A stretch of 64,000 nucleotides of DNA from Octopus bimaculoides (taxonomy: Eukaryota), in assembly GCF_001194135.2 (NCBI RefSeq), contig NC_069004.1, positions 13,982,492 to 14,046,491 of the forward strand. Reading direction: 5' to 3'. A program made the translations under genes and the position numbers. Below are positions 2,284 through 3,262 of this stretch, one piece after another. Under the pieces are notes generated by a model that was not told the origin of the DNA, ran no database searches, and was given only the letters and a program-made list of their open reading frames with translations. Positions within the stretch are counted from its first letter, which is position 1, and every line of letters starts with the position of its first letter.

Positions 2284-2440
2284 GCAGGCATGGCTGTATG
2301 GTAGGAAATTTGCTTCTCAACCACATGGTTCTGGGTTCAGTTCCACACCGTGGCACCTTAGGCAAGTATCTTCTACTATAATCATGGGCTGACCAAAGCA
2401 TTGTAATTGGATTTGGTCGACTAAAACTGAAAGAAACCCG

Positions 2441-2480
<40 letters not shown>

Positions 2481-2713
2481 CTCCTTGTCTTGACAATGCA
2501 TGACAGTTGTAAAGGATTGTCACTGTCATACAAGCAGTGTAATTCATTTCCAATATTCTGTGAGACCATGTCTGGTCATGGGGAGATATATTACCTTGCT
2601 TGGAAACAGATGAAGGTTGGTGAGAAGAAGGGCATTCAATCATAGAAAATCTGCCTCATATGAATTCTGTGCAACTCATGCAAGCATGGAAAAATGAACA
2701 CTAAATGATGATG
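2284..2713 (+). mobile_element. tRNA-derived SINE, type A2 (A head + (TG)n + distinct body + RTE-like (GAT)n tail)
   Basis: Same head as A1 (ggttcagttccac..gtggcaccttaggcaagtatcttctactata), different body, ends gcatggaaaaatgaacactaaatgatgatg. Related minus copies at 37500-38408, and bodies at 41240-41440 and 59555-59850. Confidence 0.75.
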
Positions 2714-2854
2714 AATGGTCCATAAATGTTTCTCTTTTAATTGTATCTTTTAACAAAGCTACAACATAAGTACATTTCCAAACTCAATACCAATATACCA
2801 TTGTCTTTCTGATAACTGATGATTTGGCACCTCTTTTAATCCAGATATAATTAT

Positions 2855-3018
2855 GCAGGAGTGGCTGTGTGGTAAAGTAGCTTGCTTACCAACCACATGG
2901 TTCCGGTTTCAGTTCCACTACGTGGCACCTTGGGCAAGTGTCTTCTACTATAGCCACGGGCCGATCAAAGCCTTGTGAGTGGATTTGGCAGATGGAAACT
3001 GAAAGAAGCCTGTCGTAA

Positions 3019-3068
<50 letters not shown>

Positions 3069-3262
3069 CTGTGTTTGTCCCTCCAACATCGCTTGACAAC
3101 CGATGCTGGTGTGTTTACGTCCCCGTAACTTAGCAGTTCAGCAAAAGAGACCGATAGAATAAGTACTAGGCTTACAAAGAATAAGTCCTAGGGTCGATTT
3201 GCTCGACTAGAGGCGGTGCTCCAGCATGGCTGCAGTCAAATGACTGAAACAAGTAAAAGAGT
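2855..3262 (+). mobile_element. tRNA-derived CORE-like SINE, type A1, full length
   Basis: A-box-like TGGCTGTGTGG, B-box-like GTTTCAGTTCC, CORE-like ggcaccttgggcaagtgtctt, internal TA/TG microsatellite, tail ggtgctccagcatgg...gactgaaacaagtaaaag. Other copies at about 770-990, 10795-11175, 22935-23290 and 36265-36855 (+), and 13905-14262, 27370-27768, 31240-31440, 59235-59290 and 60020-60170 (-). Confidence 0.9.

What the first reader, a model, noticed from the sequence alone, without database searches (positions are those of the whole stretch)
2284..3262. One SINE head, two tails: adjacent A2 and A1 elements point to a switch between two partner LINEs
Seen in sequence: the elements at 2284 and 2855 share the same ~160-bp tRNA/CORE-like head up to the TG microsatellite and then diverge completely. 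A1 ends ggtgctccagcatgg...gactgaaacaagtaaaag, like the CR1/L2-group LINE end at 18226-18275. A2 ends aagggcatt...catgcaagcatggaaaaatgaacactaaatgatgatg, like the RTE end at 46800-46930. The pattern repeats in the minus A2 copy at 37500-38408. Established: SINEs borrow the 3' end of the LINE whose RT mobilises them. Inference: one Pol III head was recombined at the internal microsatellite onto tails of two LINE clades, and both partner LINEs are visible in this window. It may overlap previously described octopus SINEs (the OR1/OR2 names, from memory).
Basis: partly seen in the sequence, partly recalled or inferred. Interest (0 to 1): 0.7.

Follow-up and report, generated by a model that had tools for sequence, protein, structure and literature searches.

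The report
Octopus SINE with two LINE tails
Two neighbouring copies of an abundant octopus short repeat (SINE) share one promoter-bearing front half but carry different back ends, each copied from the end of a different autonomous LINE; this is a clean but ordinary example of the known "tail swapping" of SINEs.

Summary
Elements at 2284-2713 (A2) and 2855-3262 (A1) share a ~158-nt head (about 81% identity, BLAST E 5e-37) with Pol III A/B-box-like motifs and a CORE-like domain. After an internal (TA/TG)n tract they have no detectable similarity.

- **A1 tail.** Its last ~55 nt match the whole short 3' UTR of full-length endonuclease+RT LINEs from octopus-derived contigs (49/55 to L006). They share a stem-loop that keeps pairing through compensatory changes. 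They also match a 5'-truncated LINE end in the window (18226-18580, minus strand).
- **A2 tail.** Its last ~105 nt match the 3' module of an abundant family ("T46"). In one window copy (4254-4700, minus strand) that module directly follows an RTE-like ORF2 C-terminus (profile E 0.003).
- **A2 is a real chimeric family, not nested insertions.** Three of four A2 tails are preceded by head sequence, none is followed by an A1 tail, and copy 2284 has a 6-bp target-site duplication around the whole unit.

Caveats:
- The 37491-38405 copy spans an assembly gap.
- The LINE clade names (CR1/L2-like, RTE) are only partly tested.
- A genome-wide junction test could not be run.
- Tail exchange in CORE-SINEs, including at TG tracts, is already established, so novelty is low.

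The parts
2278..2283 (+). 5' target-site duplication AATGGT of A2 copy 1
   Evidence: Identical hexamer at 2714-2719, directly after the element's terminal (ATG)n.
2284..2441 (+). A2 copy 1: head. It carries A-box-like TGGCTGTATGG, B-box-like GGTTCAGTTCC and a CORE-like CCTTAGGCAAGT...
   Evidence: 80.5% identity to the A1 head, E 5e-37. CORE-like match to the MIR core recalled from memory, 7/1000 shuffles.
2442..2478 (+). A2 copy 1: internal (TG)n tract, the point where homology with A1 ends
   Evidence: Sequence. No similarity between the tails after it.
2479..2608 (+). A2 copy 1: A2-specific body of unknown origin
   Evidence: Found only in the four A2 copies of the window (nhmmer). No similarity to RTE/T46 upstream parts.
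2609..2713 (+). A2 copy 1: RTE-type 3' module. It has the GAAGGGCAT block, the hairpin CATGC-AA-GCATG and a terminal AAATGATGATG.
   Evidence: Significant match to the T46 3' module, z 9.6, 0/1000.
2714..2719 (+). 3' target-site duplication AATGGT of A2 copy 1
2855..3013 (+). A1 copy: head (A/B-box-like motifs and a CORE-like domain)
3014..3065 (+). A1 copy: internal (TA)n(TG)n tract
   Evidence: Present at the same place in all A-family copies.
3066..3208 (+). A1-specific body
   Evidence: Conserved in 10 window copies. No match to LINE coding or UTR sequence.
3209..3262 (+). A1 3' module: GGCGGTGCTCCAGCATGGC-, hairpin CAGTCA-AA-TGACTG, then AAACAAGTAAAAG. Other copies end in (ATAAAAG)n-type repeats.
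   Evidence: Matches the LINE 3' UTRs of L004, L005 and L006 (49/55 to L006; 0/1000 shuffles). Hairpin covariation.
37491..38405 (-). A2 copy 2: head 38405-38248, TG/TA tract, N gap 37738-38058, tail 37722-37491
   Evidence: Head 78.8% and tail 82.5% identical to copy 1.
41228..41647 (-). A2 copy 3: 5'-truncated inside the head (head positions ~114-154), then a degenerate TG tract, then the A2 tail with an internal extra segment
   Evidence: 29/40 identity to the head end, 0/500 shuffles. nhmmer E 4.5e-24 for the A2 body.
59557..59753 (-). A2 tail-only copy with no head upstream
47222..47620 (+). Young A1 copy, 90% identical to 2855-3262
24785..25180 (-). Young A1 copy (87%)
27366..27763 (-). 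Older A1 copy whose head has the GGCATG start also seen in A2 heads
18226..18580 (-). 5'-truncated LINE 3' end: ORF2 C-terminus (...FKTKLNAFLSSIPDKP...) plus a 3' UTR ending GGTGGTGCTCCAGCTTGACC...GGCTGAAACCCATAAATAAA
   Evidence: The peptide has 468 homologues. The best, P0016, is a 984-aa protein with Exo_endo_phos and RVT_1 domains. The end matches the A1 tail, 0/1000 shuffles.
4254..4700 (-). 5'-truncated RTE-like LINE end: ORF2 C-terminal remnant (4671-4528), directly followed by a T46-type 3' UTR (4527-4254)
   Evidence: A profile of RTE C-termini hits here with E 0.003 over the six-frame window. The T46 tail match is 76.6%, E 7e-24.
46191..46930 (+).

Best explanation
**What it is.** A1 and A2 are two subfamilies of one octopus SINE. 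The head is tRNA-type by its A- and B-box-like motifs, followed by a CORE-like domain and a built-in (TA/TG)n tract.

**How each tail works.** Each subfamily ends in a different module that imitates the 3' end of an autonomous LINE. The reverse transcriptase of that LINE can then prime on the SINE RNA, as in the stringent-type SINE/LINE partnership of UnaSINE1 and UnaL2.
- A1 carries the complete ~50-nt 3' UTR of an endonuclease+RT LINE: a GGYGGTGCYCCAGCATGGCC box, a 6-bp hairpin, CTGAAAC and short tandem repeats.
- A2 carries an RTE-type end: a GGAAGGGCATCCAGC box, a CCATGC/GCATGG hairpin and (ATG)n.

**How A2 arose.** A2 arose once as a chimera whose junction lies in the microsatellite. It then amplified as a unit.

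**Shown and inferred.**
- Shown: the shared head, the unrelated tails, the tail-to-LINE matches, and the recurrence of the same junction architecture.
- Inferred: that the swap happened by RT template switching or recombination in the TG tract; its direction; the clade names; and actual mobilisation by those LINEs.
For: - **Head.** Homology and its end point.
- **A1 is a family.** Ten tails align in the window, and A1 copies occur in Octopus vulgaris chromosome OX597824.1 (L003).
- **A1 end matches a LINE 3' UTR.** L004, L005 and L006 encode 984-1041-aa ORF2 proteins with endonuclease and RVT_1 domains. Each stop codon lies a few to a few tens of nt before the matching box. Matches are 49/55, 47/61 and 45/58, all 0/1000 shuffles. 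The alignment is gap-free, and the hairpin is paired in 87% of cells, with U-A in nine SINE-type ends against C-G in four LINE ends.
- **L004 is of octopus origin.** Its 3' flank is 94% identical to a window repeat.
- **A2 tail.** Two blocks are shared with the T46 3' module, z 6.5-12.4. The T46 module follows an RTE-like ORF2 C-terminus at 4528-4671, minus strand, E 0.003. Terminal trinucleotide repeats and TSDs of 6-12 bp are described for RTE elements (PMC2887409).
- **A2 behaves as a unit.** Three copies have head, then TG tract, then A2 tail. Copy 2284 has the AATGGT TSD. No A1 tail lies downstream of any A2 tail. Head and tail of copies 1 and 2 are about equally diverged, 78.8% and 82.5%.
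Against: - Only four A2 tails were available (84 kb of octopus DNA). One head-tail link crosses an N gap and one copy has no head.
- The head is not recognised as tRNA by ARAGORN or by Rfam, even at E<=10.
- RTE identity rests on a single weak profile hit. The short T46 copies share a common 5' boundary, so they may be a separate non-autonomous element rather than truncated LINEs.
- About 120-130 nt of the A2 tail have no identified source.
- No full-length RTE carrying this tail was found.
- The RT clade of the A1 partner was not placed by phylogeny.
- No clear TSD was seen for A1 or for A2 copy 2.
Confidence: 0.8

Rival explanations
1. A2 did not take its tail directly from a LINE. It took it from another non-autonomous element (a T46-like SINE or a short LINE-derived element) by SINE-SINE recombination. 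The LINE resemblance is then second-hand.
For: The three longest short T46 copies start at the same point (46191, 17190, 26863), as a discrete element would. Only the last ~105 nt of the 235-nt A2 tail resemble T46, and with an internal deletion. The other ~120-130 nt are unexplained.
Against: The functional outcome is the same: an RTE-type end. One T46-type end is contiguous with an RTE-like ORF remnant. No element consisting of the A2 tail with a head of its own was found.
Confidence: 0.25
2. A2 is not a family. Each 'A2' is an independent insertion of an RTE-tailed element into the TG tract of an ordinary A1 copy.
For: Microsatellites are frequent insertion and recombination sites. Two A2 tails occur without a full head.
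Against: No A1 tail follows any of the four A2 tails. A 6-bp TSD brackets head plus tail at 2278-2719 and not the tail alone. Head and tail of copies 1 and 2 are about equally diverged. One 'headless' copy turns out to be truncated inside the head, as expected for 5' truncation of a composite RNA.
Confidence: 0.05
3. The direction is the reverse of what the reader implies. The RTE-tailed A2 form is the older one, and the abundant A1 form arose from it, or from a common ancestor, by capturing the CR1-like 3' UTR.
For: A2 copies are older than young A1 copies: about 80% pairwise identity against about 90%. A2 heads carry the GGCATGG start that is also seen in old A1 copies, and not the GGAGTGG start of young A1.
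Against: Old A1-tailed copies with the same ancestral head type also exist (27751, 22935, 36273, 14251). Both tails were therefore already present early. The window cannot order the events.
Confidence: 0.3
4. The pattern is an assembly artefact, with repeats mis-joined across gaps.
For: The window has 10 N gaps, mostly at microsatellites. A2 copy 2 spans one of them.
Against: A2 copy 1 (2284-2713) and the truncated copy 3 (41228-41647) are contiguous sequence without N.
Confidence: 0.03

Closest known systems
CORE-SINEs with exchanged LINE tails (MIR/Ther-1, MIR3, Mar-1, Mon-1; Gilbert and Labuda 1999, 2000, as summarised in PMC5804259 and PMC4824008)
   Same: A tRNA-type head and a conserved CORE domain combined with different LINE-derived 3' ends in different subfamilies. 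The tail swap is read as a change of partner LINE.
   Different: Here both forms sit in one cephalopod genome, and the break lies in a built-in (TA/TG)n tract downstream of the CORE. The CORE assignment rests on a match to a MIR core that I recalled from memory.
Octopus OR1/OR2 SINEs (Ohshima and Okada 1994), cited as octopus CORE-SINEs in PMC4824008 and PMC4758252
   Same: Octopus, tRNA-derived and CORE-bearing. A1 is the obvious candidate to be one of them.
   Different: Their sequences and tail structures were not available in the held literature, so identity with them is untested.
V-SINEs and gastropod Snail/Nin-DC SINEs, where TG tracts are proposed as recombination points (Ogiwara 2002, via PMC4758252)
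   Same: Module replacement occurs at a short TG tract. The same explanation, a recombinogenic TG repeat or RT template switch, is offered.
   Different: A different central domain. Here the tract is a long, variable microsatellite that is part of every copy.
UnaSINE1/UnaL2 of eel and the turtle SINE/CR1 pair (stringent-type SINE-LINE pairs; Ohshima and Okada 2005, from general knowledge)
   Same: The SINE ends with the LINE's short 3' UTR: a conserved box, a stem-loop and short tandem repeats. A1 and L004-L006 show exactly this, with compensatory changes in the stem.
   Different: Mobilisation has been shown experimentally for UnaL2 and not here. The clade of the octopus LINE has not been placed.
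HaSE1/HaSE2/HaSE3 of Helicoverpa armigera (PMC3272025)
   Same: Two SINEs share a tRNA-related head and central domain but have different 3' parts, one of them an RTE tail.
   Different: In that case the second tail comes from a mariner-like element and not from a second LINE clade.

Membership tests
tRNA-derived SINE | Internal Pol III promoter: A box (TRGCNNAGTGG) and B box (GGTTCGANNCC) at tRNA-like spacing | tested here: met
   By inspection of the head alignment. TGGCTGTGTGG at positions ~8-18 matches 10/11. GGTTCAGTCCC at positions ~50-60 matches 9/11. The spacing is about 40 nt.
tRNA-derived SINE | The head is recognisable as a tRNA (cloverleaf or sequence) | tested here: not met
   ARAGORN found 0 genes in the window. 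Rfam gave no tRNA match at gathering score or at E<=10 on 2270-3270 and 47200-47640. The parent tRNA is not identified.
tRNA-derived SINE | Short, non-coding, dispersed in many copies, with 5'-truncated copies and target-site duplications | tested here: met
   At least 12 head-bearing copies in 64 kb and 4 in 20 kb of O. vulgaris. Length is about 400-430 nt. There are truncated copies. The TSD AATGGT flanks A2 copy 1. TSDs of A1 copies are unclear.
CORE-SINE superfamily | The conserved CORE domain directly after the tRNA-related part | tested here: inconclusive
   Head positions 62-102 align to the MIR core (CCTTGGGCAAGT...GCCTC), 0/1000 shuffles for A1_47224. The literature says octopus OR1/OR2 are CORE-SINEs.
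Stringent-type SINE/LINE partnership (shared 3' end) | The SINE 3' end is homologous and co-terminal with the 3' end of an autonomous LINE of the same genome | tested here: met
   A1 matches L006 at 49/55, L004 at 47/61, L005 at 45/58 and window 18226-18275 at 34/46, all 0/1000 shuffles. The LINEs encode endonuclease and RT domains. For A2 the match is to T46/RTE-like ends.
Stringent-type SINE/LINE partnership (shared 3' end) | A conserved 3' stem-loop kept by compensatory change, followed by short tandem repeats | tested here: met
   Helix of columns 18-23 with 26-31: 87% of cells paired, against 9-38% when the partner is slid. Three pairs have changes on both sides. Covariation score 0.344 against 0.211+-0.038, 0/500 shuffles. 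Terminal repeats are (TTAAA)n, (ATAAA)n and (ATAAAAG)n.
Stringent-type SINE/LINE partnership (shared 3' end) | The LINE protein actually mobilises the SINE RNA | not testable with these tools
   This needs a retrotransposition assay.
CR1/L2-group LINE (partner of A1) | ORF2 with an APE endonuclease and an RT, no RNase H and no REL endonuclease; a 3' end that is not poly(A) but a hairpin plus short repeats | tested here: met
   Pfam on P0016 and P0101 finds Exo_endo_phos, Exo_endo_phos_2 and RVT_1 only. The 3' ends are shown.
CR1/L2-group LINE (partner of A1) | The RT domain groups with CR1 or L2 reference elements in a phylogeny | not tested
   No reference LINE set (Repbase or Dfam) was available. 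The assignment is by elimination among the LINE superfamilies reported for O. vulgaris: RTE, Dong-R4, CR1, L1-Tx1, Hero, R2 (PMC13282606).
RTE-clade LINE (partner of A2) | RTE-type ORF2 upstream of the shared 3' module | tested here: inconclusive
   A profile of RTE ORF2 C-termini hits 4528-4671 (minus strand) with E 0.003, directly upstream of a T46-type 3' UTR. There are only ~48 residues, no RT domain, and no Pfam hit on the T46 remnants.
RTE-clade LINE (partner of A2) | A 3' end of simple di- or trinucleotide repeats, and TSDs of about 6-12 bp | tested here: met
   A2 and T46 copies end in (ATG)n/(GAT)n. A2 copy 1 has a 6-bp TSD. The feature is as described in PMC2887409. The T46 3' UTR is long, with ~65-nt tandem units, unlike the 'extremely short' UTR of classical RTEs.

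The most novel reading that the evidence does not exclude
The built-in (TA/TG)n tract of this octopus CORE-SINE could be more than a passive breakpoint. It could be a recurrent module-exchange site: an RT template-switch or recombination hotspot. The family could then repeatedly re-arm itself with the 3' ends of whichever LINE is active. This would help explain the very large and long-lived SINE load of octopus genomes (about 8-12% of the genome) and the hundreds of 'unclassified' SINE families reported. On this reading more than two tails should be found on the same head genome-wide, all joined at the tract.
Probability: 0.2. Interest if true: 0.5.

Novelty: new member of a known kind. Interest (0 to 1): 0.3.

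Why it matters
- **Partner assignment.** It ties the most abundant octopus SINE to a concrete LINE partner, through the shared ~50-nt 3' UTR with a covarying hairpin. It ties a sister subfamily to an RTE-type end. The recent octopus repeat annotations I could read do not spell this out; most octopus SINE families there are 'unclassified'.
- **Use for annotation.** This helps annotate cephalopod genomes and date SINE bursts against LINE activity. It also bears on claims about LINE/SINE activity in the octopus brain.
- **Concept.** It adds nothing new conceptually. Tail switching in CORE-SINEs, and TG tracts as exchange points, are textbook SINE biology.

Tried and rejected
**Searches that found nothing or little**
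1. Protein search with the 74-aa LINE C-terminus through the word-indexed search: no hit. The exhaustive representative search then worked.
2. Protein search with a stitched RTE fragment (8830-9375): only coral-like RTEs. L001 has no octopus SINEs, so no octopus RTE was obtained.
3. Exact look-up of ten window ORFs: none is in the collection.
4. Scans of viral, metagenome and prokaryote-genome contigs for two head motifs: 0 hits. No genome-wide sample of copies could be built that way.
5. A look-up of P0025, hoping for a large octopus locus: only 1.3-kb Logan contigs came back.
6. OR1/OR2 sequences: Gilbert and Labuda 1999 and the supplements of two SINE papers are not held.

**Ideas tested and dropped**
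7. A1/A2 homology continuing ~25 nt past the microsatellite (CTTGACAA..GATG): not significant.
8. A third tail after the head-only copy at 19294-19135: the downstream sequence is unique.
9. The A2-specific 120 nt deriving from RTE or T46 upstream sequence: no similarity.
10. Pfam on the T46 ORF remnants: nothing.

**A measure not used**
11. Global alignment identity of the two tails is inflated by gaps, so I did not use it.
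Full report
**What the window is.**
- It is AT-rich and full of (TA)n/(TG)n tracts. It contains ten N gaps.
- It is crowded with interspersed repeats.
- The same SINE families occur in a 20-kb stretch of Octopus vulgaris chromosome OX597824.1 (L003).
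- A LINE peptide from the window finds an O. vulgaris hypothetical protein as its second-best relative.
- The window is therefore octopus genomic DNA. I did not determine the species.
- It lies inside an intron-rich gene on the minus strand (see the items noticed in passing).

**The observation.**
- 2284-2713 (A2) and 2855-3262 (A1) both start GCAGG-. Their heads align over 159 nt at 80.5% identity, E 5e-37.
- The head has an A-box-like TGGCTGTGTGG and a B-box-like GGTTCAGTCCC. It also has a CCTTGGGCAAGT...GCCTC segment that aligns with the MIR CORE as I recall it, 0/1000 shuffles for one A1 head.
- It is not recognised as a tRNA by ARAGORN or by Rfam, even at E<=10.
- Every copy then has a (TA/TG)n tract at the same place.
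- Beyond it the two elements share nothing. Local alignments of A1 tails against A2 tails score no better than dinucleotide shuffles, z<1. That includes a short CTTGACAA..GATG resemblance that I had suspected by eye.

**A1 is a large family with a LINE-type end.**
- Ten A1 tails in the window align along ~195 nt.
- Young copies (2855, 47222, 24785) are 87-96% alike. Older copies are 65-80% alike.
- The tail ends ...GGCGGTGCTCCAGCATGGCCGCAGTCAAATGACTGAAACAAGTAAAAG, followed in many copies by repeats of the ATAAAAG type.
- At 18226-18580 (minus strand) there is a 5'-truncated LINE end. It has an open frame ...FKTKLNAFLSSIPDKP... and a 3' UTR that matches the A1 end co-terminally, score 22 against 10.5+-1.5, 0/1000.
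- That peptide has 468 relatives in the exhaustive protein search. The best, P0016, matches at its C-terminus and is a 984-aa protein with Exo_endo_phos and RVT_1 domains.

**Full-length LINEs with the same end.**
- The contig of P0016 (L004) and those of two relatives (L005, L006; 72% and 64% protein identity to P0016) carry intact ORF2s.
- The 3' flank of L004 is 94% identical to another repeat of the window, so it comes from an octopus or a very close relative.
- In all three, the stop codon lies a few to a few tens of nt before a ~50-nt 3' UTR that aligns without gaps to the A1 end. Matches are L006 49/55, L004 47/61 and L005 45/58, all 0/1000 shuffles.
- The region between the GCAG and AAAC parts forms a 6-bp hairpin: CAGTCA-AA-TGACTG in A1 and CAGCTC-AT-GAGCTG in L006.
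- On 13 ends, 87% of cells pair, against 9-38% when the partner is slid. Three pairs change on both sides. One pair is U-A in all nine SINE-type ends and C-G in all four LINE ends.
- This is the anatomy of a stringent-type SINE/LINE partnership.
- Only the last ~50 nt of A1 are LINE-like. The ~145-nt body between the microsatellite and that module matches no LINE sequence I had.
- The clade name CR1/L2 is plausible for four reasons: the ORF2 has APE and RT domains; it has no RNase H or REL domain; the end is a hairpin plus repeats and not poly(A); and CR1 is among the active LINEs reported in O. vulgaris. It was not tested by phylogeny.

**A2 has an RTE-type end.**
- Four A2 tails exist in the window: 2479-2713, 37491-37722, 41228-~41600 and 59557-59753.
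- Their last ~105 nt share two blocks with the 3' module of a very abundant family that I call T46, with at least 14 copies.
- The first block is GTTGG.G..AGGAAGGGCATCCAGCTGTAGAAA.
- The second block is the terminal TCCAACCCATGC-NN-GCATGGAAA..GAAC.TTAAATGATGATG.
- The block matches give z 6.5-12.4, 0/1000.
- The second block contains a CCATGC/GCATGG inverted repeat and ends in trinucleotide repeats.
Its upstream part is ~65-nt tandem units and a short ORF remnant.
- A profile built from the C-termini of RTE ORF2 proteins has exactly one significant hit when run over the six-frame translation of the whole window. That hit is 4528-4671 (minus strand), E 0.003, reading GNLKKTWTGCLKDEAKTIGLSWSKIKEVAQ.... 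The RTE proteins used were relatives of the window's own RTE fragment at 8830-9375.
- That remnant runs straight into a T46-type 3' UTR at 4527-4254.
- RTE elements are described as ending in di- or trinucleotide repeats with TSDs of 6-12 bp (PMC2887409).
- I read the T46 module as an RTE-type LINE end, with moderate confidence. There is only one such copy, no RT domain and no Pfam support for the remnants. The three longest short T46 copies share a 5' boundary, as a separate non-autonomous element would.
- The first ~120-130 nt of the A2 tail match nothing else.

**Is A2 a fixed chimera?**
- Copy 1 (2284-2713) is contiguous. It is bracketed by AATGGT at 2278-2283 and 2714-2719, and no A1 tail follows it.
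- Copy 2 (37491-38405, minus strand) has the same head, TG/TA tract and tail, and again no A1 tail downstream. However, 321 N lie between head and tail.
- Copy 3 (41228-41647, minus strand) looked headless. In fact it keeps head positions ~114-154 (29/40 identity, 0/500 shuffles), followed by a degenerate TG tract and the A2 tail. This is what 5' truncation of a composite RNA would give.
- Copy 4 (59557-59753, minus strand) has no head.
- Between copies 1 and 2, the head (78.8%) and the tail (82.5%) are about equally diverged.
- A2 heads carry the GGCATGG start that old A1 copies also have, and not the GGAGTGG start of young A1.
- Nested independent insertions are therefore very unlikely. A2 behaves as an older subfamily that spread as one unit.
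- The sample is small.

**Mechanism.**
- Shown: one head/CORE/microsatellite module; two unrelated tails; and for each tail a terminal ~50-105-nt module homologous to the 3' end of a different LINE lineage present in the same genome. One of these modules has a hairpin that covaries with its LINE.
- Inferred from established SINE biology: each module recruits the reverse transcriptase of its LINE for target-primed reverse transcription. The chimera arose by RT template switching between two RNAs, or by DNA recombination, within the TG tract.
- The direction of the swap, and whether the donor was a LINE or another SINE, are open.

**Comparison with what is known.**
- Exchange of LINE-derived tails on a conserved head and body is the classical account of CORE-SINE evolution and of SINE modularity in general (PMC5804259, PMC4758252).
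- TG tracts have been named as the exchange points for V-SINEs and snail SINEs.
- HaSE1/HaSE2 in a moth are another pair with the same head and different tails.
- Octopus OR1/OR2 are cited as CORE-SINEs, and A1 may well be one of them. I could not see their sequences.
- Recent octopus repeat papers list mostly 'unclassified' SINEs. In the passages I read they do not describe SINE-LINE tail pairs.
- The finding is thus a well-supported new instance of a known kind. It is useful for annotation but not surprising.

Noticed in passing
window 33748-33871 (-) and 59330-59420 (-): Two apparent exons with splice-site-like borders (..ag|GCGCTG...CATG|gtaagt and tttcag|CTCTTG...GAAG|gtaagt). They encode ALRSLSWWSDGKQFMGSHSDGSLTTWNLK... 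and LLIGFESGAVVVWDLKNKTAELRFSTPE. Pfam gives only weak WD40/beta-propeller hits (best E 2e-4). From memory they resemble Lgl/tomosyn-type proteins. The window would then be intronic DNA of a large minus-strand gene.
   Followed up: partly
window 36991-37094 and 33574-33677 (both read on the minus strand): A 104-nt stretch of otherwise unique intronic sequence next to the exon at 33748 is repeated 3.4 kb away at 95% identity, close to N gaps. It could be a small segmental duplication or an assembly or haplotype artefact.
   Followed up: no
window 46191-46930, 58682-59080 (-), 16877-17190 (-), 26863-27175, 20034-20225, 41678-41867 (-), 45300-45836, 4254-4560 (-), 5464-5645 (-), 9740-9920 (-), 33384-33496 (-): A very abundant 'T46' family with at least 14 copies in the window. 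It carries a variable number (1-6) of ~65-nt tandem units (GTGCCGGTGGCACGTAAAAAGCACC...GGAAGGGCATCCAGCTGTAGAAA) before the RTE-type end. Three short copies share the same 5' boundary, so part of the family may be a discrete non-autonomous element without a tRNA-like head.
   Followed up: partly
window 9480-9720 (-), 21604-21870 (+), 35931-36140 (-): A second, different SINE-like family with a tRNA-like end and a CORE-like TTCTTGAGCAA.ACACTT segment. A related element sits next to the coral-like RTE in L001 (10800-11100). Octopus therefore seems to carry more than one CORE-type SINE lineage.
   Followed up: no
window 54165-54212 (-), 40078-40125 (-), about 39867-40091, 35782-36015, 20704-20900; L004 3238-3285: Another abundant repeat, starting TTTACTACCCACAAGGGGCTA.ACA.AGAGGGGACAAACAAG... 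It directly abuts the 3' end of the full-length LINE in L004, and this is what showed that contig to be of octopus origin.
   Followed up: partly
window 8830-9375 and 10158-10397 (+), with 9412-9445 and 10004-10040: A degenerate RTE reverse-transcriptase fragment (..PVLLY..CLRRIL..NWIGHVLR..; weak DUF6451 hit). It is split by a ~560-bp block made of two minus-strand repeats. That block is flanked by a ~30-nt imperfect direct repeat (TCAGCTCTGATC.AG..ATCTTAAATCTA.GAT), which is unusually long for a TSD. A second RTE fragment lies at 32292-32591 (-).
   Followed up: partly
window 40230-40935 (+): A mariner-type transposase remnant. Pfam Transposase_1 scores 29.4 bits, above its cut-off. There is an HTH-like stretch upstream, and the remnant has frameshifts.
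   Followed up: partly
window 47096-47220 (-), 60027-60076 (-), 59236-59285 (-): Short pieces carrying only the last 50-120 nt of an A1-type or LINE-type end (up to 94% identity to A1). They are severely 5'-truncated copies. The one at 47096-47220 is an older tail variant into which the young A1 copy at 47222 inserted.
   Followed up: partly
window 37095-37430 (-): A second 5'-truncated LINE end with a related ORF2 C-terminus (..FKQNLSKFVKGTPDKPP..), ending ..CAGGTGGTGCTATTAAGTTAGACATGGCC. It lies directly downstream of A2 copy 2. It is similar to the 18226 end only weakly (7/1000 shuffles) and does not match the A1 tail.
   Followed up: partly
window 651-718, 1260-1454, 1857-1880, 20925-21098, 25565-25574, 31463-32272, 33497-33506, 34346-35238, 37738-38058, 60217-60785: Ten runs of N, nearly all inside or beside microsatellites. 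The source is a gapped short-read scaffold, so any repeat structure that spans these gaps is unproven.
   Followed up: yes
window 19135-19294 (-): A head-only copy. After a short TG/TA tract, the following ~330 nt are unique in the window and in L003, and carry neither the A1 nor the A2 tail. It could be a deleted copy or a rare third tail.
   Followed up: partly
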